Part shown: positions 6,191 to 28,100 of the stretch, piece after piece
Numbering within the stretch: position 1 is the first letter of the stretch
How the letters are laid out: each line of letters begins with the position of its first letter
NCBI RefSeq assembly: GCF_030684315.1
Contig: NC_081387.1
Coordinates: forward strand, 6,428,497-6,492,496
Direction of reading: 5' to 3'
DNA length: 64,000 nucleotides
Source: Stegostoma tigrinum
Lineage: Eukaryota
Made by a program: the position numbers and the translations under genes
The notes under the pieces: model-generated
What the model saw: only the letters and a program-made list of their open reading frames with translations
Databases searched by the model: none
Told to the model about the DNA's origin: nothing

Positions 6191-8304
6191 TATTGGAACA
6201 CGCTCCCAGGAGTGACAGACAGAGTTAGTTGAGGGATTACCCAGCTTTTATACCTGAATGACCTTGCACCTAAAGTAAACACAACTGGGTGCCACATTTG
6301 CAAAACAAATACTTGACAAATTGCCAGATATCTCTGTTAGAATACATTATAAACAAAACACATGAAATATATCTATATATTAATAGCAAAAAATACAATC
6401 TTCAAAATAAATATCCTGACTTTTTAAAACCATAATTTTATACCATAAAGTTATGCAAAAATGCACACATTCCATTCATCAAAAAAAACCAAAAACTTAT
6501 GGATGCTTGAAATCTAAAAACAAGACAGAAATTGCTGGAGAAACTCAGCAGTATCTATGGAGAAAAGGTTTGGAATCCAATCACCCTTCTTCAGAACTAG
6601 GAAAAAGGTAGGATTAGCGCTGATTATGTGGTGCAGGAGAATAGGTGTAGACAGAGTGCAGAGAGAGAGAGAAAGTTTGGCCCGGAATGAAGAAAAAAAT
6701 GACCATGGGGACTAGAAATGAGTGAAAGTTCATTGGCCGTGCATGACATGACAGGGTGCTAGTAGCTAACGGACTTAGAAGGTGGCGATGTTCAGGCCCT
6801 AAAATTATTGAACTCGATACTGAGTCCCGAAGGCTCCGAGCAGAAAACGAAACCTTATTTCTTCCAAAATTGTTCTCAGCCTCGCTCGGGCACTGCTGAG
6901 CTTCCCTTGTCATTTCTGTTTTCGTTAAAGGTCTTCAGCATCCGCAGTTGTTTGCTTTATTTTTAGAATTTAAACACAAAACACTTTATTTTCGGAATGA
7001 ATTCTTTCAGGCGAACAGTGCCAGACTCGGTGATGGGGACAGACACGAAAGCGCTCTCCAGTAAAAGCACTGAGGCTTTGATGAGTGAACGAGGGCCCGT
7101 TGTTGTCGTTCCTTGGGCATGTAGCAATCCTTTGTCGGTATCCCTATCGGCAAGCTACTACCATTGGCTCCGGTCTCCCTTCTCCGGCCAGATGCTCACG
7201 TTGCATACATCTCTCGGCGGACTGACGCCTCCCGCCGATGGGGAAGCCACCGAGAACTGATGTTCTGATGGGCTTTTGGTCAGGATGAGTCGTTTCCCCT
7301 CCCTGTTTCCTGTGCTGGTGAAGTCTCCACTCGGACTTGGAGGGAGTGAGTTGCCTTGAGGCTGGCGACTTCAGAGACACTGACGCCCCGGAAGAGTTTC
7401 CCTAGGGCTGCTGCTCACGACCAGGAGGTCGGCAGCAGGTATTCAGGTGCACGGCTCGTCACTGTAGGACTCCCGGTGTCGATCCTGGTGGAGCAGCAGA
7501 TATAGTTTCCAGTGTGTCTCCTGGCGTAGTTCCCTGGTGCTGCTGTCCCACTTGTAGATCTTGCCGTAGTAATAGGTTTTGGTTTGCCGTGCGATTTCTA
7601 GCGTTCGTTTCCAGTGCAGCTCCTGGTATATCTCCTAGTGGCTAAGTCCTGGTGTACTTCGCTCTGGGGAATTCCTGGTATTCCCGTACCGCTACTGTAG
7701 CTCCAAGTGTTTCTCCTGGTGGAAGTTCCCAGTGTCGCTCCTGGTACTGCTGGCCACAGTTTGGAGAATGGAGAGCTCGAAGAGAGGCACGATGATTCTG
7801 CATTTGACTGCGTTGACTCTCCTGACTGCGGCTGGAGCCCATGCTGGTAAGGACGGAAGGGGATCTGGGGAATGAATGAGCTGGTGCTGGTCGTGGTCAC
7901 TCACCCACAGACCAAATGAAATACCTTTGCCGCTCTGCGAAGTCTGCGTGACGAACTGAGGGACTGAAAATCCTGTCTCACAAGCCTGTCGCAAGAGTTC
8001 TGGGTAAACACAAGCAGACTCTCGACTCGTAAGTTGTGAGCAAACTGCTCAATTCGAGCCCACGGGCTCAATTTCACAAACAAAACTCCAGCGAAGATGC
8101 CCCCGCAGAGTCCTGCAGTGTGAGTCGATATGGATTGACAGAGTGAGAGTCAGAGAAAATACAGTGTGGAGCTGGATGAACAGAGCAGGCCAGGCAGCAT
8201 CAGAGGAGCAGGAAAGTTGACGTTTCGGGACGGGACCCTTCTTCAGAAGTTCACGACTGACAGCGTGACGCACTGTCAGAGACTGAGTAAAACGGGAGTA
8301 CCTG

Positions 8305-9910
8305 AACTGTCAGAGGGTCAGGACTGAGGGAGTGTCACACTGTCACAGGGTCAGTACTGAGGGAGTGTCACACTGTCACAGGGTCAGTACTGAGGGAGTG
8401 CCGCACTGTCACAGGGTCAGTACTGAGGGAGTGTCACACTGTCAGAGGGTCAGTACTGAGGGAGTGTCACACTGTCAGAGGGTCAGTACTGAGGGAGTGC
8501 TGCACTGTCAGAGGGTCAGTACTGAGGGAGTGTCACACTGTCAGAGGGTCAGTACTGAGGGAGTGCTGCACTGTCAGAGGGTCAGTACTGAGGGAGTGTC
8601 ACACTGCCAGAGGGTCAGTACTGAGGGAGTGTCACACTGTCAGAGGGTCAGTACTGAGGGAGTGCCGCACTGTCACAGGGTCAGTACTGAGGGAGTGCAG
8701 CACTGTCACAGGGTCAGTACTGAGGGAGTGCCGCACTGTCACAGGGTCAGTACTGAGGGAGTGCCACACTGTCAGAGGGTCATTACTGAGGGAGCACTGC
8801 ACCGCCAGAGGGTCATTACTGAGGGACTGCTGCAAATTCAGAGGGTCAGTACTGAGGGAGTGTCACACTGTCAGAGGGTCAGTACTGACGGTGTGCCACA
8901 CAGTTAGAGGGTCAGTACTGAGGGAGTGCAGCACTGTCAGAGGGTCAGTACTGAGGGAGTGTCACACTATCAGAGGGTCAGTACTGAGGGAGTGTCACAC
9001 TGTCAGAGGGTCAGTACTGAGGGAGTGCTGCACTGTCAGGGGGTCAGTACTGAGGGAGTGTGCACTGTCAGAGGGTCAGTACTGAGGGAATGCCACACTG
9101 CTAAAGGGTCAGTAGTGAGGGAGTGCCACACTGCCAGAGGGTCACTACTGAGGGATCGCTGCACTGCCAGAGGGTAAGTACTGAGGGAGTGCTGCACTGT
9201 CAGAGGGTCAGTACTGAGGGAGTGCCGCAAAGTCAGAGGATCAGTACTGAGGGAGTGCCACACTGCCAGAGGGTCAGTACTGCGGGAGTTCCGCACTGTC
9301 AGAGGGTCACTACTGAGGGACGCTGCACTGCCAGAGGGTCAGTACTGAGGGAGTGTTGCAAAGTCAGAGGGTCAGTACTGAGGGTGTGCCACACTGTCAG
9401 AGCGTCAGTACTGAGGGAGTGCTGCACCGTCAGAGGGTCAGTACTGAGGGAGTGTGCACTGTCAGAGGGACAGTCCTGAAGGAGCTCTGTACTGTCAGCG
9501 AGTCAGTATTGAGGCAGTGCTGCACTGTTAGAAAGGCTTTACCCAGGGACTTCTGCCCTGTCAGATGCCCTGTGCTGTGGGAGCACTGCAGAGACACATA
9601 GAAAGTACTGATGAGGTACTGCTCTGTCAAAGGTTCAGTACTGAGGGAGTGCTACACTGTCAGAGGGTCAGTGCTAAGGGAGTGCCACACTGTCAGAGTG
9701 CCAGTGCTGAGCTAGAGAGGCACTGTCAGAGGGTCAGTACTGAGGGAGTGCAGCACTGTCCGAGGGTCAGTACTGAGGGAGTGCTGCACTGTCAGAAGGT
9801 CAGTACTGAGGGAGTGCAGCACTGTCCGAGGGTCAGTACTGAGGGAGTGCCGCACTGTCAGAGGGTCAGTACTGAGGGAGTGCCACACTGTCAGAGTGTC
9901 AGTCATGAGG
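8305..9910 (+). repeat. 33-bp tandem repeat array, about 48 units (consensus CACTGTCAGAGGGTCAGTACTGAGGGAGTGCNG)
   Basis: Directly visible 33-nt periodicity, giving 11-aa periodic pseudo-ORFs. Confidence 0.97.
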
Positions 9911-11139: not shown

Positions 11140-11348
11140 NNNNNNNNNNNNNNNNNNNNNNNNNNNNNNNNNNNNNNNNNNNNNNNNNNNNNNNNNNNNN
11201 NNNNNNNNNNNNNNNNNNNNNNNNNNNNNNNNNNNNNNNNNNNNNNNNNNNNNNNNNNNNNNNNNNNNNNNNNNNNNNNNNNNNNNNNNNNNNNNNNNNN
11301 NNNNNNNNNNNNNNNNNNNNNNNNNNNNNNNNNNNNNNNNNNNNNNNN
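11140..11348. other. Assembly gap (N run) next to a (TG)n microsatellite
   Basis: 209 N; TG-rich tract at 11079-11125. Confidence 0.99.
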
Positions 11349-12095
11349 CTGTACTCTGCCCCCACCCCCCAGGCATTCCTATAGGCATCCAGGGGCATCA
11401 ACTTCAAATTGAACCTCCACCCAGAGAGGTCCCTCTCTCAACATCCTGCCTGTAGGGGACATTCAGAACCCAGACTCAAACTGCACCCATAACCACCTCT
11501 CCATCTCCTGTTTCAACTGGAGAGACAATCGTAGGCATTTGGTGAGACCATGCCTGGAAAACAGTCAGCTCTTTTAGTCTCCCTGTCTCAGGCATCATTG
11601 CAAGGATGATCCCAGAGGATTGGCCTAGGATAAGAAATTGAGTGAATTGGGATCATATTCTCTGCAGTTCCAAAGAATTAGAGGTGATAGTAGTGTCCCA
11701 TCAGGATACTGCTGACAGCCATGCTTGGGGAAACTAAAGCACTTGGTCAAGGATAAAGGGGTTCATTGTTTATGACTGAAATAAGGAGAAATGTGTTTTC
11801 TTCAGAGAGGGTGGTGAATTTTTGGAATTCTCTGGCCCAGACAGTTGCAGGTGCTCCAGTCTCTTTGATGCCTGAAGCAAACAGAGTTTTGAGCTTTCAG
11901 GAAATTGAAGGTGAAGGGGATAGGCTGAATGGGCAGGAAGGCTGTCTCCAGTTCTTATTTCATGACCATTCATTTCTTGCCCATTTCCTTGAAGGTGAGG
12001 GTGTCAAAGGCAGATCAGGTCCTGAGGCCGGCAGGTAGGGGCTACGGGGGTGCTCTGTCCCTCATTCATGATCCTTGTGTGTGACCTTCCCTCAG

Positions 12096-12344
12096 GCTCC
12101 CACAGCTTGCAGTATCTCTTCATTTACGCCCCCCTGCATCGGGACCTCCCGCAGCTCTCTATGATTGGAATGTTGGATGATCTTCAGATCGAGTACTATG
12201 ACAGCTCCCTCAATAGGATTCAGCCCAGACAGCAATGGATGGCCAGCAAGATCTCGGACGATTACTGGCAGGAGCAGACCATGGCTGTAGATGCACTTCA
12301 AAACCACATCTTCAGGAAAACTGCTCCAGTTGTCACAATGCTTG
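12096..12344 (+). CDS. Non-classical MHC class I heavy chain, alpha1 exon
   Basis: Acceptor ccctcAG, phase 1, open frame (G)SHSLQYLFIYAPLHRDLPQLSMIGMLDDLQIEYYDSSLNRIQPRQQWMASKISDDYWQEQTMAVDALQNHIFRKTAPVVTML(G), donor G|GTACGT. Class I hallmarks GSHSLxY, GxLDD, YDS, PRxxWM and YWxxxT. Confidence 0.93.
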
Positions 12345-13539
12345 GTACGTCACATTGGTCCTAGTGCACCCTTGTAAGTCAAAATGGAATTCGGGTAACA
12401 CTAATGTATCATGGGTATAAACTGACATGGGGCAGTGACCGATGGTTCTTCACCTTTCCAGTTATCTAATTACAAAAGGAAATATGGTAACAACAGCTTG
12501 TGATTATGTAACAGCCCTAATTTGATTTGATTGAATCTATTATTGTCACATGTACCCAGTACTGTGAAAAGTTTTGTTTTGCATGCAGTGCGTTCTTACC
12601 ATAAAAGAGAGCAAGGGATACAATGTTACACCTGCAGACAATGTGCGCAAACAGTGAGGTCAATGTTAAATTCAGAAGTCTAACAACGGCCTTTAATATA
12701 CTAAATGTCCTAAGGTGCTTCATAGAATCCCTACAGCACAGAAAGAGGCTATTCAGCCCATCAAGTCTGCACTGATCCTCCGAGAAGCATCTCACCCATG
12801 TACTCATAACCACACATTTCCAATACCTAACCCACTTAGCCTGCATACCTCTGGAAACTACAGGGCATTTTGCACAGTCAATCCACCTAACCGGCATATC
12901 TTTAGGCTGTGGGAGGAAACCTACACCTACATGGGGAGCATGTGCAGACTTCATCACAGCGAATCACCCCAACCTAGAGTTAGGCTTGGGTCCCTGGTGC
13001 CATGTCGCACCAGTGCTAACCATTGAGCCACCATGCTTCACAGGAGGGGCAGCAAAGAAAACTTGACAATGAGTTGTCATACCTTTGTCAAAGCATCACT
13101 TTGAGGAAGAATCTTAAAGGAGAAAACTGAGGTAGAGAGGCAGGGAAAGAGATGGAAGGAATTTCAGAACTTGGGCTCATGGTCCATTGAAGGTGCTGTC
13201 ACCAGTAATGGAGCGATTATGATCAGACATGCTCAAAACCCCAGAAAGGTCTGAATCTAGTACCAGAGCATTGGAGATAAAAATGAGAGGTTGGCTATTT
13301 AGACAGATATGAGGAAACAATGTTTTCTTTCCGAGGGTTGTGAGTCTTTGGTATTCTCTTCCACAAAATAGTTCCGTTAGAAATGTGGGTGTTAAGCAAG
13401 ATAGGTAAAGAAAAGGTGCGAAAACGGTTGACAGCACTCCAGGTTGAAAAGATGCCAGCCCCCAAAATAGCTGAGAGAGGTAAGAGAGCAAATTGTGGTG
13501 TCAATGTCAGAAATTTTCCAGGCCTCGCTGAACACAAAA

Positions 13540-14850
13540 TTCGACCTGGGGACTGAAGGATTGCAAATGTGACACCGTTGTTTCAGAAAGGGTCAAAGAA
13601 TAACCAAGGAAACGACAGGCCTGTCAATTTGACATCGATAGCAGGAAAAATAACAGAAGCCATTGTATAGGGTAAAATAATTATACACTTAGAAAAAATT
13701 AACTCAATACTAGACTAACTTAATACTACTTTGCCAAGGGCAATTCATGTCTGGCAAATGAATTGAGTTCTTTGATGAGGTGACACAGGCAGTGGGTGAG
13801 GGTAGTGCTGTGGATGTTGTGCGTTTGGACTTTCAGAAAGCATTTGATAAGATATCACATGCAGGTTAGAAGGAAAATTAGATACGTTTGGGATTGATGG
13901 GTTCTGGGCAGAATGGATTAGAAATTGGCTAAAAGGCAGCAAACAGAGGATTGGTATAGATAGGCATTTTTCAGATGAGTTGAAAATGGTGTTCCCCAGA
14001 GAATGATGTAGGGGAACTTGCATTTTTCGATTTACGTAAATGATTTGAAGATGCGTGTTGAAGACAAAGTCACTCGGTTTGATGAAACTAAGCTAGGTAG
14101 AATAGTGAATTGCGAGGATAATGCTGTGTGACTTTGTAGAGACATTGACAAGTTGGGCAAATGGGCAAACACCTGACAGAAGAATTTCAATGCAGACAGT
14201 TTTGAAATAATGCATTTTGGTAGAAGAAACACGGAGAGACAATACAGACTCAATGGTACAACTTTGTGGGGAGTACAGGAGTAAAGGGACCTCAGGGTCC
14301 ACATGCGTAATTCCCTGAAGCTGACCAGGCAAGTAGAAACAGATGCTAAGAAGGCTTATAGGATCCTTGTGTTTATTATTGGAGGCATAGAGTACAGAAG
14401 CAAAGGAGTAATGCTCCATCTCTACAAATCATTCGTCAGACTACATTTTGAGTGTTGAGTTCAATTCTGGACATCTTATTTAATGAAGTGTATTAAAGCT
14501 CTCAAGATAGTGTGCGAAGGAGATTTATTAGAATGATAACAGGATTGAGGGATTTTAGAGACAAAGAAATATCAGAGAGATAGGGCTTATTTTCCTTGGA
14601 GTAGAGAAGATAAAAATGCAATTTTATTGAGGTATTCAAAATCATGACCAATTTAAGAAGGATATTCTGTTTTCAATAGTCACACCAATAATTCAAGATT
14701 GTCAGCAGGGGAGCCAGGAGTAAGATGTGGAGAAATTTCTTTATGCAGAGAGTTCTTAGGATTTGGAATGCACTGCTGGGAGAGTGGTGGAAGTGGATTC
14801 CTTCAGCGGTTTCAAAACAGAGCTGGACCTATGTTTGAAAGTGACAAATT
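13540..14850 (+). mobile_element. CR1 LINE reverse-transcriptase fragment (decayed) in the MHC alpha1-alpha2 intron
   Basis: ANVTPLFQKGSKNNQGNDRPVNLTSIAGK, LDFQKAFDKI and the C-terminal CR1 region, with many stops and frameshifts. Confidence 0.88.
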
Positions 14851-15996
14851 TATGGAATCATAGAATCCCTACAGTGTGGAAGAAGGCTCTTCAGCCCTTT
14901 GAGTCCACATCAATCCTCCGAGGAGCATTCCACCCAGACTCAATACCCTAACCCAGCCCGCAACCCTGCATTTGCCATGGCCAATCCACCTAACCTGTGC
15001 ATCTTTGGACTGTGGGAAGAAACCGGAGCACTCAGAGGAGACCCATGCAGACTCAGGGAGAATGTGCAAACTGTATGCGGACAGTTGCCCAAGGGTGGAA
15101 TTGAACCTGAACCCATGGCACTGTGAGGCAGTCATGCTAACTATAATTTAGAGGGCTAGGACTAAAGAATAGACTAGCTGGGTAACTTTTTTCATTCAGT
15201 TGAATGGTCTCCTTTTGTACACTGTAAAATTTTATGACAGTAAAAGTCAATGGATGAAAAATCCTTCCATATTTTTTAAGGCAGAGATCGACAGATTCTT
15301 GAGTACCAAGGGAATCGGGGTGTGTGGGAATGTAGAGCTGAGGTTAAAACCAGATTGGCCATGATCTTATTGAATGGTGGAGTGGGCTTGAAAGGGCCCA
15401 AGTGGTCTATTGTTGTTCCTTCCTCATATGTTTGTAATAAGTGAGGTATGATTTCTCTGAAATGAGACCAGAGGAGATTACAGAAACAGACAAACACCAC
15501 TTGAGAACAAAAGAGAAATTTTAACAACAAGCAATTGCCTGACCAGGAGCCAGAGTGTATCAGCATGGAATAAGGTGGTGAATAGAGGCAGGAATCCCTG
15601 CCCTTCAGGACATACTTGCCTCTTCAGGAGTCCTCTTAAAATTCACGACTTTGATCATTCTGATCTAATATCTCCCATTGTGTTTCAACGCTAATCTTTG
15701 TGTAGTAATTCCCCTGCGCAGCTCCTATGTCGTATGAAAGATGTTCAGCACCTCAATGGGAATAGGATATATCGAGTAGGAGCTTGGTCTGCTGGATAAG
15801 GTGAACTCTGAGACAGCGTTAAGAAACCATAGAGAAACAGTACATCCGCAGCCTCCCGTCAGGATCTCCAAATCTGCATTGAACATTGCCGCATACCATA
15901 CACCATACATTTCCACATGATGGGCCAGGGGCTCCACCTAATAGAGACGTGATTGGACAGATCTATCGTTAATGCCTGATTGATCTTCATTTGCAG

Positions 15997-16269
15997 GTAT
16001 CCAATACATCCAGGTCCTCTGGGAATGCACGGTGGAAAATAGCCAAAACACCACAGCGTTTGTAAAGATAAATGTCAATGGGTTTGGAGATGTTGAATGT
16101 GACTTGTTCACAGTGCGTTGCAGGGGGCTTGGTGTGTTTTCTTCTCTGTCTGGAATGTTTGAAGATATCCTCAAACATGATCCCACTTTTATCCAGTTGC
16201 TGAACCCCAGATGTGTTGAAAGCCTCCAGACAGTACTTCGAGCTGGTAAAACAGCCCTGGAAAGAAAAG
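15997..16269 (+). CDS. Non-classical MHC class I heavy chain, alpha2 exon
   Basis: Acceptor tttgcAG, phase 1, 273 nt open: (G)IQYIQVLWECTVENSQNTTAFVKINVNGFGDVECDLFTVRCRGLGVFSSLSGMFEDILKHDPTFIQLLNPRCVESLQTVLRAGKTALERK. Shows C101/C164 equivalents and a CVExLxxxLxxGKxxLERK end. Donor AAG|GCAAGT. Confidence 0.9.
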
Positions 16270-16299
16270 GCAAGTGGAAGAGTACAGTTAGATGCTGAG

Positions 16300-16601
16300 A
16301 CTGACCTAGACCTGGATGCTGAGTGTGATCGGGATCAGGGTTCCGATTGTGATCCAAAACTGGTTTCCAAGTGTGATCCAATTTCTGGGTGTGGTACAAA
16401 TTTGATTTCCCAATGTGATCTGGATTATGATCACCATCCAAATCTGATTTCCGGGTGTGGTCCGGATTCTGACTTTGAACCAATCCAGTTTCCTATGTTA
16501 TCCCTGGATCTGGATTCTGAGTGTGTTCCTTGTCCAGAATTCTGGCTGCAAACCAAATCCCAGTTCCGAGTGTGATCTGGAGCTGGATTCTGAATGTGAT
16601 C
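16300..16601 (+). repeat. Degenerate minisatellite of about 24 bp (CTGGATTCTGAGTGTGATCCAAAT-like) in the alpha2-alpha3 intron
   Basis: Recurrent TGTGATC(C/T) and (C/T)TG(G/A)(A/T)T(T/C)C words at 18-24 nt spacing. Confidence 0.65.
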
Positions 16602-16763
16602 AGAGATAATGGGAACTGCAGATGCTGGAGAATCCAAGATAACAAAGTGTGGAGCTGGATGAACACAGCAGGCCAAGCAGCATCTTAGGAGCAGAAAAGC
16701 TGACGTTTCAGGCTTAGATGCTGCTTGGCCTGCTGTGTTCATCCAGCTCCACACCTTGTTATC
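16602..16763. mobile_element. Miniature Penelope pLTR-derived hairpin insertion
   Basis: Two inverted copies of the Penelope 3' end, flanked by the 19-bp direct repeat CTGGATTCTGAATGTGATC (16583-16601 and 16764-16782). Confidence 0.85.
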
Positions 16764-16853
16764 CTGGATTCTGAATGTGATCCGTTGGGTGAACATTGCA
16801 TTAACTTTCAAAAGAAAGAGTGCCTTTCACTTTCATTTCTGATTCTTCCTCAG

Positions 16854-17129
16854 TTGTTCCCCAGGTACTGGTTTTCAAAAGGAGCTCCACTGTGGAGATG
16901 TCCACACCTCTCCTGTGCCTCATCACTGCCTTTTATCCCCGCACCATCAATGCCACATGGCTACATAACGGAGAGCCTGTATCAGAGGACCTTACAGTGA
17001 GGGTTCTGCCAAACCATGATGCCACATACAGAATGGAGCTCATCATTGACATCAAGAACAACGACCCAAGCAGCTACTGTTGCCAGGTTCAGCATCATAG
17101 CTCGTGTGAAACACTGAGAGTAACATCCG
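16854..17129 (+). CDS. Non-classical MHC class I heavy chain, alpha3 (Ig C1-set) exon
   Basis: Acceptor ttcctcAG, phase 1, 276 nt: (V)VPQVLVFKRSSTVEMSTPLLCLITAFYPRTINATWLHNGEPVSEDLTVRVLPNHDATYRMELIIDIKNNDPSSYCCQVQHHSSCETLRVTS(G). Motifs LxCxxxxFYP, W, VLPNxDxTY and YxCxVxH. Donor G|GTAAGG. Confidence 0.95.
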
Positions 17130-17589
17130 GTAAGGTATCACACAACAACATTGCACCAAAGATGGCCCCTTGAGTCATGCTGCCTGTGAACGACTAAACC
17201 AACTCGACCAGCTCCTTACTCTTGCTTGTGCATTTTTCCCTTTAAGTATATTTAATTCCTTTTTGAAAGTCACCTGCTTCTTACACAATTTTATTTCTCA
17301 ACACAGCAACACGTTGTTAAAAAAAAACAAAAAACCCTCTGAGCAGATCATTTATAAGCTGTGTCCTCTGGCCAGCAATTCTCCCGCCAATGCAGGGAGA
17401 AATAATCTTTTTTTAAAAAAATTCCTGATAAATTGTCAGTTGATGAAATAGAAGGAGGGAGCTGGAAAAAGCTTGGAAAAATGTATGGATGAGCTAAGAG
17501 CTAACTTTCAAGATTAAGCAATGGCAGGCTGGAGAGTCATTGAAATTAAACAACAAACTCAGTAGCTGAGTGGCCAGTGATAGTTCAGA

Positions 17590-18290
17590 GCTGCTAATGC
17601 TGGAGTCACAGATAGCTCGGTGTGGAGCTAAAGGAACACAGCAGGTCCAGCAGCATCAGAGGAGCAGGAAGCTGACATTTTGGTTCAGGACATGTCTTCA
17701 GAAACGGGGAGGGGGAGGGAGCTCAGAAATAGAGAGTGGAGGGCCGGGCTGGGGAAGGTAGGTGAGATGGTGATAAGTGAATGCAAGTAGGCAGTGGTGG
17801 GGATTAATCCGTGAGGTGGGAGGAGCGGATAGGTGAGAGAGAAGATTGACAGGTTGTGTCAGGTCAAAGAGATGGGGATGAGAGGGAGGAGTGGTCATGG
17901 GATGAGGCCAGGGATGGGGAGATTTTGAAACTGGTAAAATTCACATTTAGGCTGCAGGATCCTGAGGCGGAATGCGAGGTGCTGCTCCTCCAGTTTTCGG
18001 GTGGCATCACTGTGACACATGAGGAGACCCAGGATGGACATGTCACCCAGGGACTGGGAGGGGCTGTTGAAGTTGTTTGTGACCAGAAGGTATTATCATT
18101 CATCACGATCAGAGTGCAGATGCTCTACAAAGTGGTTTCTGAGCCTCCGCTTGGTCTCACTGATGTGGAGGAGGCCACAGCAGGAGCAGTGGATACAGTA
18201 GACCAAGTTGACAATGTGCATGTGAACCCCTGTTGTTTGTGGAAAGTTTGTTTGGTGCTTTGAATGGAAGTGAGGGGGGAAGTGATGGGG
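17590..18290 (-). mobile_element. Penelope-like element 3' fragment (GIY-YIG end + pLTR), decayed
   Basis: Homologous to 21643-22460; translates LNVNFTSFKISP; pLTR with a degenerate hammerhead. Confidence 0.8.
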
Positions 18291-20335
18291 CTAGCACTGC
18301 TGCCTCACATTGCCAGGGACCTGGGTTCAATTCCAGGGTATATGTGTGTGTGGAGTTCGAACATTCTTCCTGTGTCTGCATGGGTTTCCTCTGCACTCTA
18401 TAGTTTCCTCCCACAGTCCAAAGATGTGCTGGCCAGGTGGATTGGCCATGTCAAATTTCCCCCTATCCAAGGGATGTGCAGGCTGGGTGGGTGAGCCATG
18501 GTAAATGCAGGGTTACAGGGATAGGGTAGGGAGGTGGGTCTGGGTGTGATGGTGTTTGGAAGGTTCTTGTGTACTTGATGGGCAGAATGGCCTGTTTCAA
18601 TGCTGTAGGGATTCTGTCACCCAGTTCTAGTGTTCAAATAGCCCCTTATAGGTTTGCTGCATTCAGGCCTTCATTTGTTCATTTCAAAAGGTATAGAGGG
18701 TTGGTTTAATTGAGGCGATGTATTTCAGATTTTACGTTTCAGTTTTCAAAACACATGGCCAATCCACCTGACCTGCACATCTTTGGACTGTGGGAATAAA
18801 CTGCAGCATGCAGAGGAAACCCATGCAGACAATGGGAGAATGTTCAAACTCCACACAGTCACCCAAGGGTGGAATTGAGCCCAGGTCCCCTGGATCTGTG
18901 AGGCAGCAGTGCTAGCCCCTACTCCTCCCCCTCACCTCCATTCAGCCCACACCCTGTGCCTTGTTCCCCTTCTGAGTTCCAAGGAATCAAGAGATCACGG
19001 CAGCAGCTGTTGGGTGAGGAACTGGATGGCGTTGCACAAAGAGGAAGGAAGTTGAGGTGTGAGGAGGGTGCAGAAGAGGTTTACCAGGATGCTGCCTGGG
19101 TTAGAGGGTATGAGCTATAAGGAGAGGTTTTCAAAAGGAATTGGACAAAAGATCTGTTTCTCTGGTGCATTACTCTATAAATGGGTTTCTTCAACTTAAA
19201 ACTGCCAGAGAACAAAAGAAATAGAGATAGGGAGTAAAAAATGTGATAACCAGCGAGGTTGGCATAGGTTAGAGTATTGTGGTCAATCCAAGGTGCTTCA
19301 AGGAGAATATATAGAATAAGGATACAAAGGAGATTTATTGGGGAAAGGGGACAATGGATTGGAAGAGAAGCTGGGAATGTCAGGATGGTACACCTTGAAA
19401 CAGTGAAGGTCATATAGGTCGTAGTGTTGGTGATGATTTATGATAAAAGCAAAGTATTGCAGATGCTGGAGATCTGAACTAAAAACTGACAATGCTGGAG
19501 AAACTTCACAGGTCTGGCAGCTGCCGTGGCGAGAGACACAAAGTTAGCATTCTGAGCCTGGTATGGCTCTTGTTCAAAGCTTAAAGCTGTTGTAAAATAG
19601 ATTACATTTTGATACTATTGACAGAGGCAGAGGAGGCCCAAGGGGGTCAGAGGCCTAATGCAAAAGACAGAGGGTTGTTCAGAGTGTATAAAAGAAGAGA
19701 TGTAAAATGGGGGTAAATTGAGGTGTGAAGGAAGGAGAACGGGTGCTCTCTACTAACTACAAAGTAAACAAAACACAAACACAACTTGGCTGATGGGGAG
19801 GAGTTGGGAGAATGTAAGAAAAATGGAAGATACCCACACTGTGGTCAGTTACTGAAGTTGCTGAATTCATTATTGAGATCAGCAACCTTGGATGCAGACA
19901 TTCTCACCCCCAACCCTTAATTTGATGTCCACTGGGATTTTAATGGCACGGGAGAGTAAAACAGCTGGGTAAAACCCTCACCTCTCTAAAGCTGCTTCCC
20001 AACCTGCTTTCAGCCTCCCCCACAACCCAAGGACCCACCTAGCTTTTAGCCAAAGTTTCCCACTACTCAATGGAATTCCATTCGACCCAGGAACTGTGTT
20101 CCTTAAAGATGAATCCCATTGGGAGCTAATGGGGAATCCAAGACGAATCACTCACGAACTCACTGGGATGAATCTCATGTCAGGCAGAGTTATGGAAATC
20201 GACAAACCCATTGGAAGTTGTCCATTTCAACAGCCCCAAACAATGCAAAAGGAAGTGCAGCCAGGGTGAATAACTGGGAGGCATCGTGAGCAGTCACTCA
20301 GCATCTACTGCAGGCAATATCCAAAGCGCTGTGAC

Positions 20336-20506
20336 NNNNNNNNNNNNNNNNNNNNNNNNNNNNNNNNNNNNNNNNNNNNNNNNNNNNNNNNNNNNNNNNN
20401 NNNNNNNNNNNNNNNNNNNNNNNNNNNNNNNNNNNNNNNNNNNNNNNNNNNNNNNNNNNNNNNNNNNNNNNNNNNNNNNNNNNNNNNNNNNNNNNNNNNN
20501 NNNNNN
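20336..20506. other. Assembly gap (N run)
   Basis: 171 N, ending 35 nt upstream of the predicted TM exon. Confidence 0.99.
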
Positions 20507-20541
20507 TTTAATGGTCTGTGTGTGTTATATCTGGCATGCAG

Positions 20542-20627
20542 GAGTTGCTCGTGTCAGCCACAGTATTTGTCCTGGCCCAATGCTGTGCCTATTCATTGTG
20601 CTGGCAATAGTGACAGGCGTGGCGTAG
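20542..20627 (+). CDS. MHC class I connecting peptide/hydrophobic C-terminal exon (exon runs to 20669; in-frame TAG at 20625-20627)
   Basis: Acceptor catgcAG, phase 1: (G)VARVSHSICPGPMLCLFIVLAIVTGVA*. Strong donor CAG|GTGAGT at 20669/20670. Confidence 0.7.
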
Positions 20628-20777
20628 GAAGCAATTTCAGTGAAGGCCGTGGGAAAGACGCAAGCACAGGTGAGTAAGGACTTGCATCCAGGTCTCACAT
20701 CCCGTTCATCATCTAAAAGCAAGTGATAATAAGTGACAATATTCTATCTGTAGTGACCTGCTCCTTCTCTTTCCCAG

Positions 20778-20951
20778 ATGAGCATGAATTCCTGCAAGTC
20801 TCTCACCAGCTGCCCAGTACTGAATCAATGATTGAGATGCTGCCAGTTGTTTCATGAAAGCAAACCTGTCTGCAACAGTTTCACTGTCACCTCTAACATG
20901 ATAATCGGCTGGACTTTATTCTTTTGCATTGTATTATTGCTTTCTAATAAA
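20778..20951 (+). other. Probable last exon of the MHC gene (ancestral cytoplasmic-tail exon/3' UTR) with polyA signal
   Basis: Strong acceptor ctccttctctttcccAG after a 108-nt intron. The phase-1 frame reads (D)EHEFLQVSHQLPSTESMIEMLPVVS* (stop 20855-20857). AATAAA at 20946-20951, with a second at 21297-21302. Confidence 0.6.
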
Positions 20952-21585: not shown

Positions 21586-21958
21586 ATGTTGCAAAAGTGG
21601 GACACACAATCCATCTGTAAATGGAACACTGCTTCAGTACAAGGTAATAAAATGTGAGGCTGGATGAACACAGCAGGCCAAGCAGCATCTCAGGAGCACA
21701 AAAGCTGACATTTCGGGCCTAGACCCTTCATCAGAGAGGGGGATGGGGTGAGGGTTCTGGAACAAATAGGGAGAGAGGGGGAGGCGGACCGAAGATGGAG
21801 AGAAAAGAATATAGGTGGAGAGAGTATAGGTGGGGAGGTAGGGAGGGGATAGGTCAGTCCAGGGAAGACGGACAGGTCAAGGAGGTGGGATGAAGTTAGT
21901 AGGTAGATGGGGGTGCGGCTTGGGGTGGGAGGAAGGGATGGGTGAGAGGAAGAACAGG

Positions 21959-23337
21959 TTAGGGAGGCAGAGACAGGTTGGACTGGTTTTGGGATGCAGT
22001 GGGTGGAGGGGAAGAGCTGGGCCGGTTGTGTGGTGCAGTGGGGGGAGGGGACGAACTGGGCTGGTTTAGGGATGCAGTTGGGGAAGGGGAGATTTTGAAA
22101 CTGGTGAAGTCCACATTGATACCATTGGGCTGCAGGGTTCCCAGGCGGAATATGAGTTGCTGTTCCTGCAACCTTCGGGTGGCATCATTGTGGCAGTGCA
22201 GGAGGCCCATGATGGACATGTCATCTAAAGAATGGGAGGGGGAGTGGAAATGGTTTGCGACTGGGAGGTGCAGTTGTTTGTTGCAAACTGAGCGGAGGTG
22301 TTCTGCAAAGCGGTCTCCAAGCCTCCGCTTGGTTTCCCCAATGTAGAGGAAGCCACACCGGGTACAGTGGATGCAGTATACCACATTGGCAGATGTGCAG
22401 GTGAACCTCTGCTGAATGTGGAATGTCATCTTGGGGCCTGGGATAGGGGGGAGTGAGGAGGTGTGGGGACAAGTGTAGCATTTCCTGCGGTTGCAGGGGA
22501 AGGTGCCGGGTGTGGTGGGGTTGGAGGGCAGTGTGGAGCGAACAAGGGAGTCGCGGAGAGAGTGGTCTCTCCGGAAAGCAGACAGGGGTGGGGATGGAAA
22601 AATGTCTTGGGTGGTGGGGTCGGATTGTAGATGGCGGAAGTGTCGGAGGATGATGCGTTGTATCCGGAGGTTGGTGGGGTGGTGTGTGAGAACGAGGGGG
22701 ATCCTCTTTGGGCGGTTGTGGCGGGGGCGGGGTGTGAGGGATGTGTTGCGGGAAATACGGGAGACGCGGTCAAGGGCGTTCTCGATCACTGTCGGGAGAA
22801 AGTTGCGGTCCTTGATGAACTTGGACATCTGGGATGTACGGGAGTGGAATGTCTTATCGTGGGAGCAGATGCAGCGGAGGCGGAGGAATTGGGAATAGGG
22901 GATGGAATTTTTGCAGGAGGGTGGGTGGGAGGAGGTGTATTCTAGGTAGCTGTGGGAGTCGGTGGGCTTGAAATAGACATCGGTTACAAGCTGGTTGCCT
23001 GAGATGGAGACTGAGAGGTCCAGGAAGGTGAGGGATTTGCTGTAGATGGCCCAGGTGAACTGAAGGTTGGGGTGGAAGGTGTTGGTGAAGTGGATGAACT
23101 GTTCGAGCTCCTCTGGGGAGCAAGAGGCGGCGCCGATACAGTCATCAATGTACCAGAGGAAGAGGTGGGGTTTGGGGTCTGTGTAGGTGCGGAAGAGGGA
23201 CTGTTCCACGTAACCTACAAAGAGGCAGGCATAGCTGGGGCCCATTCGGGTGCCCATGGCCACCCCCTAAGTCTGTAAGAAGTGGGAGGAATCGAAAGAG
23301 AAGTTGTTGCGGGTGAGGACGAGTTCGGCTAGGCGGA
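21959..23337 (-). pseudogene. Penelope ORF C-terminal part (RT core, thumb, CCHH linker, GIY-YIG endonuclease)
   Basis: GVAMGTRMGPSYA, WYIDD, CNRRKCYTCPH and NVVYCIHCTRCGFLYIGETKRRL; one stop (FLQT*GVAMG); 5' truncated. Confidence 0.93.
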
Positions 23338-24792
23338 AGTATGGCGCACTGACCTCTACATCGCCGAGGTAAGACGCCAACTCTCCGACACCACCTCCTA
23401 CCACCCCCTCGATCATGACCCCACATCCGAGCACCAAACCATCATCTCCAACACCATTCATGACCTCATCACCTCAGGGGACCTCCCACCCACAGCCTCC
23501 AACCTCATTGTTCCCCGACTCCGCACGGCCCGTTTCTATCTCGTTCCCAAAATCCACAAACCTGCCTGCCCTGGTCGACCCATCGTCTCAGCCTGCTCCT
23601 GCCCCACCGACCTCATCTCCACCTATCTGGACTCCATTTTCTCCCCTTTGGTCCAGGAACTCCCCACCTACGTCCGTGACACCACCCACACCCTCCACCC
23701 CCTCCAGGACTTCCAATTCCCTGGCCCCCAACACTTCATATTCACCATGGACGTCCAGTCCCTATACACCTGCATTCCGCATGCAGATGGCCTCAAGGCT
23801 CTCCGCTTCTTCCTGTCCCGCAGGCCCGACCAGTTCCCCCTCCACCGAAACCCTCATCCGCCTATTCCCAATTCCTCCGCCTCCGCCGCATCTGCTCCCA
23901 CGATAAGACATTCCACTCCCGCACATCCCAGATGTCCAAGTTCTTCAAGGACCGCAACTTTCCCCCCACGGTGATCGAGAACGCCCTTGACCGCGTCTCC
24001 CGCAACACATCCCTCACACCCCGCCCCTGCCACAACCGCCCAAAGAGGATCCCCCTCGTTCTCACACACCACCCCACCAACCTCCGGATACAATGCATCA
24101 TCCGCCGACACTTCCGCCATCTACAATCCGACCCCACCACCCAAGACATTTTTCCATCCCCACCCCTGTCTGCTTTCCGGAGAGACCACTCTCTCCGCGA
24201 CTCCCTTGTTCGCTCCACACTGCCCTCCAACCCCACCACACCCGGCACCTTCCCCTGCAACCGCAGGAAATGCTACACTTGCCCCCACACCTCCTCCCTC
24301 ACCCTTATCCCAGGCCCCAAGACGACATTCCACATTAAGCAGAGGTTCACCTGCACATCTGCCAATGTGGTATACTGCATCCACTGTACCCGGTGCGGCT
24401 TCCTCTACATTGGGGAAACCAAGCGGAGGCTTGGAGACCGCTTTGCAGAACACCTCCGCTCAGTTTGCAACAAACAACTGCACCTCCCAGTCGCAAACCA
24501 TTTCCACTCCCCCTCCCATTCTTTAGATGACATGTCCATCATGGGCCTCCAGCAGTGCCACAATGATGCCACTCGAAGGTTGCAGGAACAGCAACTCATA
24601 TTCCGCCTGGGAACCCTGCAGGCTAATGGTATCAATGTGGACTTCACCAGTTTCAAACTCTCCCCTTCCCCAACTGCATCCCTAAACCAGCCCAGTTCGT
24701 CCCCTCCCCCCACTGCAACACACAACCGGCCCAGCTCTTCCCCTCCACCCACTGCATCCCAAAACCAGTCCAACCTGTCTCTGCCTCCCTAA
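23338..24792 (+). pseudogene. Penelope ORF fragment: N-terminal RT part fused to thumb/GIY-YIG, lacking the RT core
   Basis: FYLVPKIHKPACPGRPIVS and FTMDVQSLYTCIP, then a jump at 23864/23865 from TLIRL directly to SQFLRLRRICS; GIY-YIG present. Confidence 0.92.
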
Positions 24793-25013
24793 CCTGTTCT
24801 TCCTTTCACCCATCCCTTCCTCACACCCAAAGCCGCACCCCCCATCTACCTACTAACCTCATCCCACCTCTTTGACCTATCCGTCTTCCCTGGACTGACC
24901 TATCCCCTCCCTACCTCCCCACCTATACTCTCTCCACCTATCTTCTTTTCTCTCCATCTTCGGTCCGCCTCCCCCTCTCTCCCTGTTTATTCCAGAACAC
25001 TCACCCGATCCCC

Positions 25014-25050
25014 CTCTCTGATGAAGGGTCTAGGCCCGAAACGTCAGCTT
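25014..25050 (+). ncRNA. Minimal hammerhead ribozyme motif in the Penelope pLTR
   Basis: CTGATGA-A-GGG-TCTAGG-CCC-GAAA-CGTC: conserved core, 3-bp helix II, and a palindromic ACGT in place of helix III, as described for Penelope-like elements. The mirror copy at 21703-21738(-) has GAAATGTC. Confidence 0.75.
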
Positions 25051-25199
25051 TTGTGCTCCTGAGATGCTGCTTGGCCTGCTGTGTTCATCCAGCCTCACAT
25101 TTTATTATCTTGGATTCTCCAACATCTGCAGTTCCCATTATCACTGCTTCAGTACAAACGCCCGAGGACTGGTGCAGTCCCTGAGTACTGGCAATCAGG

Positions 25200-28100
25200 C
25201 TATGCAGCAGTCGCTCAGGTCTGGCCCTCTGACAGTGAAGCATTCCCTCAGTACTGACCCTCTGAGAGTGCAGCACTCCCTCAGTACTGACCCTCTGAGA
25301 GTGCAGCACTCCCTCAGTACTGACTCTCTGAGAGTGCAGCAATCCCTCAGTCCTGACTCTCTGACAGCAGTAGCACTCCCTCAGCACTGACCCTCTGACA
25401 GTGAAGCATTCGCTCTGTACTGATACCCTGACAGTGCTGCATTCCCTCAGTGCTAGCCCACTGATAGCGCAGCACTTCCTTAGTACTGATCCTCTGACAG
25501 TGCGACACTCCGTCATGACTGACCCTCTGACAGTGAAGAATTCCCTACGTATTTATCCTCTGACTGTACAGCACTCCCTCAGTGCTGACCCTCTGACAGT
25601 GCAGCTGTCCCTCAGTACTGACCCTCTGACAGTGCAGCAAATCCCTCAGTACTGACCCTCTGACAGTGAAGCACTCCCTCAGTACTGACACTCTTACAGT
25701 TCGGATCTCCCTCAGTACTGACCCTTTGACAGTTCAGCACTCCCTCTGCACTGACCCTCCGACAGTTCGGCCTTCCCTCAGTACTGACTCTCTGACAGTG
25801 CAGCTGTCCCTCGGTACTGACCCACTGACAGTGCAGCACTCCCTCAGTACTGACCCGCTGACAGTGCTGCACTCCCTCATGACTGACCCTCTGGCAGTGA
25901 AGAATTCCCTCAGTACTTATACTGTGACTGTACAGCATTCCCTCAGCACTGAACTTCTGATAGTGCAGCACTTCCTCAGTCCTGACCATTTAACAGTTCG
26001 GATCTCCCTCAGCACTGACCCTCTGACGGTGCTGCACTTCCTCTGCACTGACCCTCCGACTGTTCGGCCCTCCCTCAGTACTGACACTCTGACAGTGCAG
26101 CACTCCCTCAGCACTGACCCTCTGACAGTGCAGCTGTCCCTCGGTACTGACCCTCTGACAGTGCGGCACTCCCTCAGTACGGACACTCTGACAGTGCGGC
26201 ACTCCCTCAGTACGGACACTCTGACAGTGCTGCACTCCCTCAGTACTGACCCTCTGACAGTGCAGCACTCCCTCAGTACTGACCATCTGACAGTGCGGCA
26301 CCCACTCAACACTGACCCTCTGACAGTGCGGCACTCCCTCAGTACTGACCCTCTGACAGTGCAGCACTCCCTCAGTACTGACCCTATGACAGTGCAGCCC
26401 TCCCTCACCACTGACCCTCTGACAGTTAAGTTCTCCCTCCGTACTGACCCTGTGACAGTGTGACACTCCCTCAGTACTGATCCTCTGACTGTACAGCACT
26501 CCCTCAGCACTGACCCTCTGACAGTTAAGCTCTCCCTCCGTACTGACCCTGTGACAGTGTGACACTCCCTCAGTACTGATCCTCTGACTGTACAGCACTC
26601 CCACAGCGCTGGCCCTCTGACAGTGCAGCTCTCCCTCAGCACTGACCATCTAACAGTGTGACACTCCCTCAGTACTGACCATCTGACAGTGCGGCACTCC
26701 CTCAGAACTGACCCTCTGACAGTGCTGCAATCCCTCAGCACTGACCCTCTGACAGTTAAGCTCTCCCTCAGTACTGACCATGTGACAGTGTGACACTCCC
26801 TCAGTACTGACACTCTGACTGTGCAACACTCCCTCAGTACTGACCCTCTGACAGTGCGGCACTCCCACAGTACTGACCCTCTGAGAGCACATCACTCCCT
26901 CAGTACTGACCCTCTGACAATGCAGCTGTCCCTCGGTACTAACCCTCTGACAGTGCGGTACTCCCTCAGTCCGGACCCTCTGACAGTGCAACACTCCCTC
27001 AGTACTGACACTCTGACAGTGCGGCACTCCCTCAGTACTGACACTCTGACAGTGCGGCACTCCCTCAGTACTGACCCTCTGACAGTGCGGCACTCCCTCT
27101 GCACTGACCCTCTGACAGTGCAGCACTCCCTCAGTACTGACCCTATGACAGAGTGGCACTCCCTCAGTACTGACCCTCTGACAGTGCGGCACTCCCTCAG
27201 TACTGACCCTCTGACAGTGCAGCACTCCCTCAGTACTGACCCTATGACAGTGCAGCCCTCCCACAACACTGACATCGAACAGTGCTGCAATCCCTCTGCA
27301 CTGACCCACTTGGGAGTGCAGCACTCCCTCAGTACTGACCCTCTGACAGTGCAGCACACCCTGAGCACTGACCCTCTGACAGTGAAGCATTCGCTCTGTA
27401 CTGATCCCCTGACAGTGCGGCACTCCCTCAGTACTGACCATCTGACAGTGCGGCAGTCCCTCAGTACTGGCCCAGTGATAGCGCAGCACTTCCTTAGTAC
27501 TGACCCTCTGACAGTGCAGCACTCCCTCATGACTGACCCTCTCACAGTGAAGAACTCCCTCAGTACTTATCCTCTGACTGTACAGCATTCCCTCAGTACT
27601 GACCGTCTGACAGTGCGGCACTCCCTCAGTACTGACCCTCTGACAGTGCAGGACTCCCTCATGACTGACCCTCTGACAGTGCGGCACTCCCTCAGTACTG
27701 ACCCTCTGACAGTGCAGGACTCCCTCATGACTGACCCTCTGACAGTGCGGCACTCCCTCAGTACTGACCCTCTGACAGTGCAGCACCCCCTCAACAGTGA
27801 ACCTCTGACAGTGCAGCAGTCCCTCAGTACTGACCCTCTGACAGTGCGGCACTCCCTCAACACTGACCTCTAACAGTGCTGCACTGCCTCAGTACTGACC
27901 CTCTGACAGTGCAGCTCTCCCTCAGTACTGACCCTCTGACAGTGCGGCACTCCCTCAGTACTGACACTCTGATAGTGCGGCATTCCCTCAATACTGACCC
28001 TCTGACAGTGCAGCACTCCCTCAGTACTGACCCTCTGACAGTGCAGCACTCCCTCAGTACTGACACTCTGACAGTGCAGCACTCCCTCAGTACTGACCCT

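What the first reader, a model, noticed from the sequence alone, without database searches (positions are those of the whole stretch)
12096..20951. Highly divergent non-classical MHC class I gene with a hydrophobic, probably non-peptide groove
Seen: three open phase-1 exons for alpha1, alpha2 and alpha3. By manual alignment to HLA-A2 numbering, only Y7 and Y59 of the peptide-terminus anchors remain: 84=M, 123=D, no T143/K146/W147, 159=L, 167=S, 171=V. Alpha1 is short (83 codons) and lacks the N86 glycan site. Floor positions are hydrophobic (F9, Y11, L22, M24, I95, V97, W99, V114, I116). Several alpha2 residues near the beta2m interface differ from the usual consensus (H93Q, Q115K, A117N, D119N, D122G). 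Knowledge: sharks have several non-classical lineages (UBA-UFA), and hydrophobic grooves typify lipid binders such as CD1/EPCR. Inference: a lipid-binding or ligand-free class I molecule, possibly of an unnamed lineage or a very derived member of a known one.
Basis: partly seen in the sequence, partly recalled or inferred. Interest (0 to 1): 0.82.

Follow-up and report, generated by a model that had tools for sequence, protein, structure and literature searches.

The report
Shark UFA lipid-type MHC class I gene

Summary
The three phase-1 exons are real: alpha1 12096-12344, alpha2 15997-16269, alpha3 16854-17129. Each matches PDB chain 8GM8_A at 84-87% identity. That entry is titled "Crystal structure of shark nonclassical MHC CLASS I, UFA" (nurse shark). 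In domain-wise trees the window groups with nurse shark UFA: sister in alpha2 and alpha3, unresolved but adjacent in alpha1.

The "missing" leader exon lies at 7768-7846. The full reading frame is 320 codons with no lesion. Both assembly gaps fall inside introns, and the protein is colinear with orthologs across them.

The stop right after the hydrophobic segment (TAG 20625-27) is not damage. All 24 full-length family members found, from sharks and rays, end 0-4 residues after that segment. This looks like a GPI-anchor signal.

RNA contigs from two related species are spliced at the same junctions, including an unusual GC donor after alpha2. No RNA run of the window's own species was indexed.

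The window copy shows no faster change than the nurse shark protein (11 against 12 unique changes).

The scan also noted other hydrophobic-groove class I genes about 213 and 278 kb away in this genome; I did not check those notes.

The parts
7768..7846 (+). Leader (signal peptide) exon, coding part: ATG at 7768, 26 codons plus 1 nt, donor G|GTAAGG. Peptide MESSKRGTMILHLTALTLLTAAGAHA.
   Evidence: tblastn with ortholog leaders (P0012 leader, E 2.6e-6, 59% identity). Sequence read.
8306..9910 (.). 33-bp tandem repeat (49 copies) inside intron 1.
   Evidence: Tandem Repeats Finder.
11140..11348 (.). Assembly gap inside intron 1. Not filled.
   Evidence: It lies between the leader exon and alpha1, and orthologs have no residues missing there.
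12096..12344 (+). alpha1 exon, 83 codons, phase 1.
   Evidence: Pfam MHC_I E 3e-8. 84% identical to 8GM8_A residues 1-83. Spliced RNA contigs of relatives join 12343/4 to 15996/7.
15997..16269 (+). alpha2 exon, 91 codons, phase 1, GC donor at 16270-71. Carries the lineage-specific extra cysteine pair (VECDLFTVRC).
   Evidence: 87% identical to 8GM8_A residues 84-174, with no other real PDB hit. No Pfam hit. RNA contigs end this exon at 16269 and continue into alpha3.
16854..17129 (+). alpha3 exon, 92 codons, Ig C1-set, phase 1.
   Evidence: Pfam C1-set E 2e-13. 85% identical to 8GM8_A residues 175-265.
20336..20506 (.). Assembly gap inside intron 4, 35 nt before the next acceptor. Not filled.
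   Evidence: The window reads RVTS|GVARVSHSICPGPMLCLFIVLAIVTGVA. This is colinear with, and the same length as, Chiloscyllium TVMS|GVGRVSQRIWPGPALCLFTMLAMAVGAV.
20542..20669 (+). Last coding exon: connecting peptide plus C-terminal hydrophobic segment, stop TAG at 20625-20627, then 42 nt of 3' UTR up to the donor GTGAGT at 20670.
   Evidence: Sequence. blastp to ortholog C-termini gives 55-62% identity. The tail-less ending is conserved in all 24 full-length family members.
20778..20951 (+). Putative final, non-coding exon (acceptor AG at 20776-77) ending near the AATAAA signal at 20946-20951.
   Evidence: Read from the sequence only. No RNA evidence. This part is inferred.

Best explanation
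The window holds the UFA gene of an orectolobiform shark that is closer to the nurse shark than the bamboo shark is. UFA is a non-classical, MHC-linked class I lineage so far found only in sharks and rays.

The gene has five coding exons across about 13 kb: leader, alpha1, alpha2, alpha3, and a connecting-peptide/hydrophobic-end exon. Together they encode a 320-residue precursor.

By orthology with the crystallised nurse shark protein, alpha1 and alpha2 form a class I platform that has lost six of the eight residues that hold peptide ends. Its floor and helices present mostly hydrophobic side chains. The discoverers report that such a groove carries lipids, as in CD1d. alpha3 is a normal C1-set domain, presumably pairing with beta2-microglobulin.

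The protein ends directly after a 13-16 residue hydrophobic stretch. That stretch is preceded by Pro/Gly and small residues and has no basic stop-transfer residues or cytoplasmic tail. I read this as a GPI-attachment signal, which would give a lipid-anchored surface molecule without CD1's tail-based endosomal sorting.

Shown here: exon structure, intact frame, orthology to UFA, conserved tail-less end, and splicing in relatives. Inferred: lipid binding (from the literature on the ortholog), beta2m pairing, GPI anchoring, and expression in this species.
For: - Identity: each exon matches 8GM8_A with E 1e-43 to 1e-49 and 84-87% identity. Foldseek gives the entry title as shark nonclassical MHC class I, UFA.
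- Trees: domain-wise trees put the window with nurse shark UFA, with SH-aLRT 99 in alpha2 and 85 in alpha3 inside a 97-supported orectolobiform trio. In alpha1 the two are adjacent at an unresolved fork. The family tree follows the species tree.
- Rarity of alpha2: only three real relatives among 1.84 billion representative proteins, all from sharks or rays.
- Intact gene: leader found; 963 nt frame without lesions.
- No decay: 11 window-unique against 12 nurse-shark-unique residue changes. Only 1 of 24 otherwise invariant family columns is changed, and the family range is 0-2.
- Selection: about 35 non-synonymous and 18 synonymous differences to the nurse shark over 738 sites, omega about 0.5 (rough).
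- Expression in relatives: spliced RNA contigs in two related organisms and three studies use the same junctions, including the GC donor.
- C-terminus: tail-less hydrophobic end in all 24 full-length family members, while outgroups have 20-23 residue membrane segments followed by RRRR/KKRK tails.
- Literature: UFA is CD1-like in its binding region and maps in the MHC-Ib cluster (PMC10751288). Crystal structure and mass spectrometry suggest lipids like those of CD1d (PMC12562908).
Against: - No RNA run of the window's own species was indexed, so expression here is untested.
- The lipid claim rests on statements about unpublished work on the nurse shark ortholog, not on anything measured here.
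- The window has unusual residues in the alpha3 G strand: HHSSC where the family has HSSLP, including loss of a family-invariant Leu. It also carries extra unpaired cysteines.
- Omega of about 0.5 is only weakly separated from neutrality (one-sided p about 0.03 by my normal approximation to the counts).
- GPI anchoring is judged by rule of thumb only; no predictor or assay was available.
- 85% identity could also fit a recent paralog rather than a strict ortholog.
Confidence: 0.88

Rival explanations
1. The copy in this species is a recently silenced or decaying UFA pseudogene that still looks intact.
For: No RNA evidence for this species. Not found among database proteins, so possibly not annotated. 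One family-invariant Leu lost and extra cysteines in alpha3. Omega about 0.5 is not far from 1.
Against: A 320-codon frame with no stop or frameshift, and all splice sites usable. No rate acceleration against the expressed nurse shark gene, 11 against 12. The deviation count lies within the family range. The early stop is the family norm.
Confidence: 0.08
2. It is a UFA-like paralog (a second locus) rather than the ortholog of nurse shark UFA, possibly with a different ligand.
For: Only 85% protein identity to the nurse shark. The literature calls UFA single- or low-copy (PMC12562908). Rays have several copies.
Against: Each shark species in the search has one copy (Chiloscyllium shows two database entries of what appears to be the same gene). 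The tree follows the species tree. No second copy in this 64 kb window. RNA contigs of two related organisms differ from the window by roughly similar amounts, about 7% and 8-10%, as expected for species divergence.
Confidence: 0.06
3. The molecule does not present lipid to T cells. Instead it acts as a ligand-free or constitutively filled, GPI-anchored surface marker read by NK-type receptors, in the manner of Qa-2, MILL or ULBP proteins.
For: The tail-less, GPI-like end is shared with several such class I-like molecules (the comparison is from general knowledge). No T cell or ligand data were accessible here.
Against: Its discoverers report crystal and mass-spectrometry evidence for bound lipids (PMC12562908). 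The alpha3 domain and the platform cysteines are conserved over the shark-ray split.
Confidence: 0.15

Closest known systems
Nurse shark UFA (PDB 8GM8, Ginglymostoma cirratum; UniRef A0ABF7PPZ1)
   Same: Same domain order and lengths (83/91/92 residues). 84-87% identity in every domain. Same extra alpha2 cysteine pair, same NTT and NAT sequons, and same exon junctions in its transcripts.
   Different: 39 of 265 residues differ. The window has HHSSC for HCSLP in the alpha3 G strand and an extra Cys next to the canonical alpha3 Cys. It comes from a different species.
CD1 (lipid-presenting class I-like molecules of tetrapods)
   Same: Reported to work alike: a hydrophobic groove that carries lipids, little or no polymorphism, and a class I-like heavy chain with a C1-set alpha3 (PMC10751288, PMC12562908).
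   Different: No detectable sequence membership: the Pfam CD1-type model MHC_I_3 gives 15.8 bits against a cutoff of 35. Foldseek on the ortholog model ranks chicken YF1*7.1, BF2, UGA and MR1 among its top 50 neighbours and no CD1 entry appears there. There is no cytoplasmic tail, so CD1's tyrosine sorting motif is absent. UFA is MHC-linked.
Shark UGA (PDB 9CH4)
   Same: The second shark class Ib lineage described as CD1-like. It is the next-best PDB match of the alpha1 exon (E 1.2e-11) and a close structural neighbour.
   Different: Only about 27% identity overall. The alpha2 exon of the window does not detect it by sequence.
Chicken YF1*7.1 (non-classical class I that binds N-acylated ligands)
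   Same: Best non-UFA Foldseek neighbour of the ortholog model. It is a class I fold with a hydrophobic groove that takes lipid-type ligands (entry titles).
   Different: 22% identity. E-values among the neighbours are nearly flat, so the rank means little. It is a bird Y-locus gene, not a relative of this lineage.

Membership tests
UFA lineage (elasmobranch MHC class Ib) | Close sequence relationship to the reference UFA protein in all three extracellular domains | tested here: met
   84%, 87% and 85% identity to 8GM8_A. Entry title names UFA. Sister in the alpha2 and alpha3 trees, adjacent but unresolved in alpha1.
UFA lineage (elasmobranch MHC class Ib) | Divergent alpha2 domain with an additional conserved cysteine pair besides C101/C164 | tested here: met
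   VECDLFTVRC is present. The pair is conserved across the family and both cysteines are lost together in Heptranchias. alpha2 has no Pfam hit and only three real relatives in 1.84 billion representatives.
UFA lineage (elasmobranch MHC class Ib) | C-terminus ends right after the hydrophobic segment, with no cytoplasmic tail (feature derived here from the family, not from the literature) | tested here: met
   Stop at 20625-27. All 24 full-length members end 0-4 residues after the segment.
UFA lineage (elasmobranch MHC class Ib) | Location in the MHC-Ib cluster with UDA and UEA, between brd2/beta2m and hsd17b8/rxrb (PMC10751288) | tested here: inconclusive
   No other gene lies in the 64 kb window. 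Unchecked scan notes report other class Ib genes 144-278 kb away.
UFA lineage (elasmobranch MHC class Ib) | Hydrophobic groove that carries lipid | not testable with these tools
   Only residue counting was possible. Groove positions are A, V, L, I, P, V, M on the alpha1 helix and L, L, F, L, F, V on the alpha2 helix by landmark numbering. Ligand data are reported for the nurse shark protein only (PMC12562908).
Classical peptide-presenting MHC class I | The eight residues that bind peptide termini (Y7, Y59, Y84, T143, K146, W147, Y159, Y171) | tested here: not met
   Only Y7 and Y59 remain. Position 84 is M, 159 is L and 171 is V, and there is no T143/K146/W147 (translation, counted from C101/C164).
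CD1 | Sequence match to the CD1-type platform model, plus a cytoplasmic tail with a sorting motif | tested here: not met
   PF16497 gives 15.8 bits, below its cutoff of 35. There is no tail.

The most novel reading that the evidence does not exclude
UFA, the shark counterpart of CD1, is GPI-anchored and tail-less in all sharks and rays. If so, the oldest known lipid-type class I molecule would reach its ligands without the endosomal recycling tail that defines CD1 biology, and would load lipids in the secretory pathway or at the cell surface. I found no statement of this in the papers I could read. The window gene would be one clean example, with the former tail region now serving as 3' UTR.
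Probability: 0.5. Interest if true: 0.45.

Novelty: new member of a known kind. Interest (0 to 1): 0.27.

Why it matters
The finding itself is mostly a confirmation: a sequence-only reading correctly recognised a lipid-type class I molecule. The lineage was named in 2023 and its structure was released in 2024, so no new kind of molecule is involved.

The report adds three things:
- A complete gene model for one more species, including the leader exon and a conserved GC-AG intron.
- Evidence that neither the assembly gaps nor the early stop damages the gene.
- The family-wide observation that UFA proteins have no cytoplasmic tail and look GPI-anchored. That bears on how a CD1-like molecule could sample lipids in the oldest jawed vertebrates.

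Tried and rejected
- **Leader exon by pattern:** a search for ATG plus a hydrophobic stretch plus a phase-1 donor between 8000 and 12095 gave only low-complexity false candidates. The real leader lies further upstream and was found by homology.
- **Alternative alpha2 donors:** the GT donors at 16274 (out of frame) and 16282 (95 codons) were rejected. The 8GM8 sequence and the RNA contigs join ...ERK directly to V.PQ at 16269.
- **Frameshift in the last coding exon:** I considered a 1-nt frameshift because the +1 frame reads WRRKQFQ* after the stop. It was rejected because that frame holds stops inside the hydrophobic segment and all orthologs end at the same place.
- **Papers citing the PDB codes:** none found for 8GM8; all hits for 9CH4 were unrelated. 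PMC8454915 is not held.
- **Ortholog DNA:** No ortholog DNA could be fetched, so no proper codon-level dN/dS or synteny comparison was done. Only a rough count from contig differences was possible.
- **RNA of this species:** no RNA run was indexed.
- **Joined protein:** All searches were run exon by exon, and the fold used the nurse shark ortholog P0011.
- **Assembly gaps:** the N stretches were not filled or looked up.
- **Paralogs:** none found in the window.
Full report
**Observation**

The + strand between 12 and 17 kb holds three open exons with class I character.
- alpha1 runs 12096-12344, with an AG acceptor and a GTACGT donor.
- alpha2 runs 15997-16269.
- alpha3 runs 16854-17129, with a GTAAGG donor.

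All three are entered and left in phase 1. Pfam places alpha1 in MHC_I (E 3e-8) and alpha3 in C1-set (E 2e-13). alpha2 matches no Pfam family even at E 10.

Y7 and Y59 are kept. M, L, S and V sit at positions 84, 159, 167 and 171. There is no T143/K146/W147 and no sequon at the end of alpha1. The strand under the groove reads Q93, I95, V97, W99. The one caveat is that the numbering for 114-123 depends on where a single one-residue gap is placed.

**What it is**

A sequence search of the Protein Data Bank with each exon gave the same top hit, chain 8GM8_A. The E-values were 1.7e-43, 1.8e-49 and 3.5e-47, covering residues 1-83, 84-174 and 175-265. Identities are 84%, 87% and 85%.

For alpha2 there was no other real hit in the whole PDB. 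The chain equals a 265-residue Ginglymostoma cirratum protein in UniRef (P0011).

I folded P0011 with a family alignment (pLDDT 82.7) and searched the PDB by structure. That returned the entry titles:
- 8GM8 is "Crystal structure of shark nonclassical MHC CLASS I, UFA", released 2024-11-27.
- 9CH4, the second-best match of alpha1, is the same for UGA, released 2026-03-18.

Two papers name the lineage.
- Verissimo et al. [quoted passage not shown] They place it in the class Ib cluster with UDA and UEA.
- A 2025 review (PMC12562908) says that crystal structure and mass spectrometry suggest UFA and UGA bind lipids like those bound by human CD1d. It cites this as a personal communication.

**Family and orthology**

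I scored the alpha2 exon against 1.84 billion representative proteins. Only three real relatives came back: bamboo shark, basking shark and a stingray.

A profile word search then listed about 30 family members.
- Each shark species contributes one gene: Carcharodon, Cetorhinus, Mustelus, Scyliorhinus torazame, Heterodontus, Pristiophorus, Heptranchias, Chiloscyllium (two database entries of what appears to be the same gene) and Ginglymostoma.
- Rays have several copies each: Mobula, Hemitrygon, Hypanus, Pristis, Amblyraja, Narcine.
- No chimaera or bony-fish member appeared. The next tier, some teleost proteins, is far weaker.

Domain-wise maximum-likelihood trees place the window with nurse shark UFA.
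- In alpha2 the support is SH-aLRT 99.
- In alpha3 it is 85, inside a 97-supported trio with Chiloscyllium.
- In alpha1 the two sequences are adjacent at an unresolved fork.
- The rest of the tree follows the species tree.

The window species is therefore an orectolobiform closer to the nurse shark than the bamboo shark is. Its own protein was not among the database proteins found.

**Gene model and the gaps**

Leader peptides of orthologs locate the leader exon at 7768-7846. It has an ATG in good context, 26 codons plus one base, and a G|GTAAGG donor.

After alpha3 the next coding exon starts at 20542 and reads GVARVSHSICPGPMLCLFIVLAIVTGVA, followed by TAG at 20625-27. The sum 79+249+273+276+86 nt gives 320 codons plus stop, with no internal lesion.

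The scan's program asked that the gap be tested first.
- The gap at 20336-20506 lies in intron 4, 35 nt before the acceptor.
- The gap at 11140-11348 lies in intron 1.
- Across both, the window protein is colinear with orthologs and has the same lengths, so no coding sequence is expected inside them.

A further exon (20778 onward) and the AATAAA at 20946-51 are read from the sequence alone.

**The early stop**

Another note of the scan (s1-881800) asked whether the stop right after the hydrophobic segment is a lesion. It is not.

All 24 full-length family members, sharks and rays alike, end 0-4 residues after a hydrophobic stretch. The core of that stretch, after the Pro, is only 13-16 residues. 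It is preceded by small residues and a short polar spacer. Outgroup class I proteins instead have 20-23 residue segments followed by RRRR or KKRK and a tail.

This is the pattern of a GPI-attachment signal. I rate that reading at somewhat better than even, because no predictor or assay was available.

**Is the copy alive?**

No RNA run of the window's species was indexed; its DNA runs hold 0.92-0.95 of the sampled words. Runs of two other organisms held small shares, so I laid their contigs on 11400-17300.

The results were:
- Contigs join 12343/4 directly to 15996/7 (runs X1 and X3).
- Contigs join 16269 to the start of alpha3 (runs X1 and X3). This confirms the junctions and the GC donor.
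- The listed non-synonymous differences of organism A reproduce the residues of P0011 one by one, so organism A is the nurse shark or something indistinguishable from it.
- One contig joins alpha1 straight to alpha3, skipping alpha2 in frame.
- One contig is unspliced.

These data show that the orthologs are transcribed and spliced. They say nothing direct about this species.

Indirect tests speak against decay.
- With Chiloscyllium as outgroup, the window has 11 unique residue changes and the nurse shark 12.
- The window departs from 1 of 24 otherwise invariant family columns, and the family range is 0-2.
- A rough count gives about 35 non-synonymous and 18 synonymous differences over 576 and 162 sites. 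That is an omega of about 0.5, only modestly below neutrality by my approximate test.

**How it likely works**

By orthology, the protein enters the secretory pathway through its signal peptide. It forms a class I platform whose groove cannot hold peptide termini and is lined by hydrophobic side chains, and it carries lipid.

An extra disulfide in alpha2 is likely. The two cysteines are conserved and are lost together in Heptranchias.

alpha3 keeps the C1-set core and the NAT sequon. The 8GM8 heavy-chain sequence occurs in three chains of the entry, two of them lettered A and E. This hints at heavy and light chains alternating, but I did not verify that beta2m is present.

The tail-less end separates UFA from CD1 in trafficking, whatever the anchor turns out to be.

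**Comparison and novelty**

The gene is a member of UFA by every feature I could test. It is not a classical class I gene (2 of 8 anchor residues). It is not a CD1 family member by sequence (PF16497 below cutoff, no tail), although it is reported to work like CD1.

Foldseek neighbours of the ortholog model are nearly flat in score. Chicken YF1*7.1, itself a binder of acylated ligands, ranks first, and no CD1 entry appears among the 50 matches listed.

What remains new is modest: one more ortholog with a full gene model, and the family-wide GPI-like end.

**Limits**

Noticed in passing
window 25203-41178 and 8306-9910: A 33-bp satellite fills 16 kb downstream of the gene (485 copies). The same unit, in the opposite orientation, forms a 1.6 kb array (49 copies) inside intron 1 of the UFA gene.
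   Followed up: partly
window 12095-12348 joined to 16858-17078 (run X2, record 7): One RNA contig of the nurse-shark-like organism joins alpha1 directly to alpha3, skipping the 273-nt alpha2 exon in frame. This is either an alpha2-less isoform or an assembly artefact.
   Followed up: no
window 16270-16271: The intron after alpha2 has a GC donor (AAAAG|GCAAGT) instead of GT. Transcripts of two related species end the exon at the same base.
   Followed up: yes
window 17078-17110 (alpha3 G strand): The window reads YCCQVQHHSSCETL where the family has Y.CQVQHSSLPETL. It has two extra cysteines and has lost a family-invariant Leu. The nurse shark also has a Cys in this motif (HCSLP).
   Followed up: partly
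window 16522-16915 and 14749-15142: Intron segments just upstream of alpha3 and in intron 2 collect very high contig depth (up to about 4e5) in all four runs laid. This points to an abundant, transcribed interspersed repeat. The peptide-like motif CCLACCVHPA.H recurs at several places in the window.
   Followed up: no
window 21700-25160: A Penelope-like retroelement (reverse transcriptase plus a GIY-YIG-type motif) with two inverted arms lies directly downstream of the gene. It was already noted by the scan (s1-881723).
   Followed up: no
family proteins P0004-P0031: UFA relatives appear as one gene per shark species but are multi-copy in rays (at least five in Mobula birostris and in Hemitrygon akajei). 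Their automatic names are inconsistent: MR1-like, CD1d-like, HFE homolog, zinc-alpha-2-glycoprotein-like, Q7-like.
   Followed up: partly
P0026 (Heptranchias perlo), alpha2: Both cysteines of the lineage-specific alpha2 pair are replaced together (Y and W). This supports the idea that they form a disulfide with each other in the other members.
   Followed up: no
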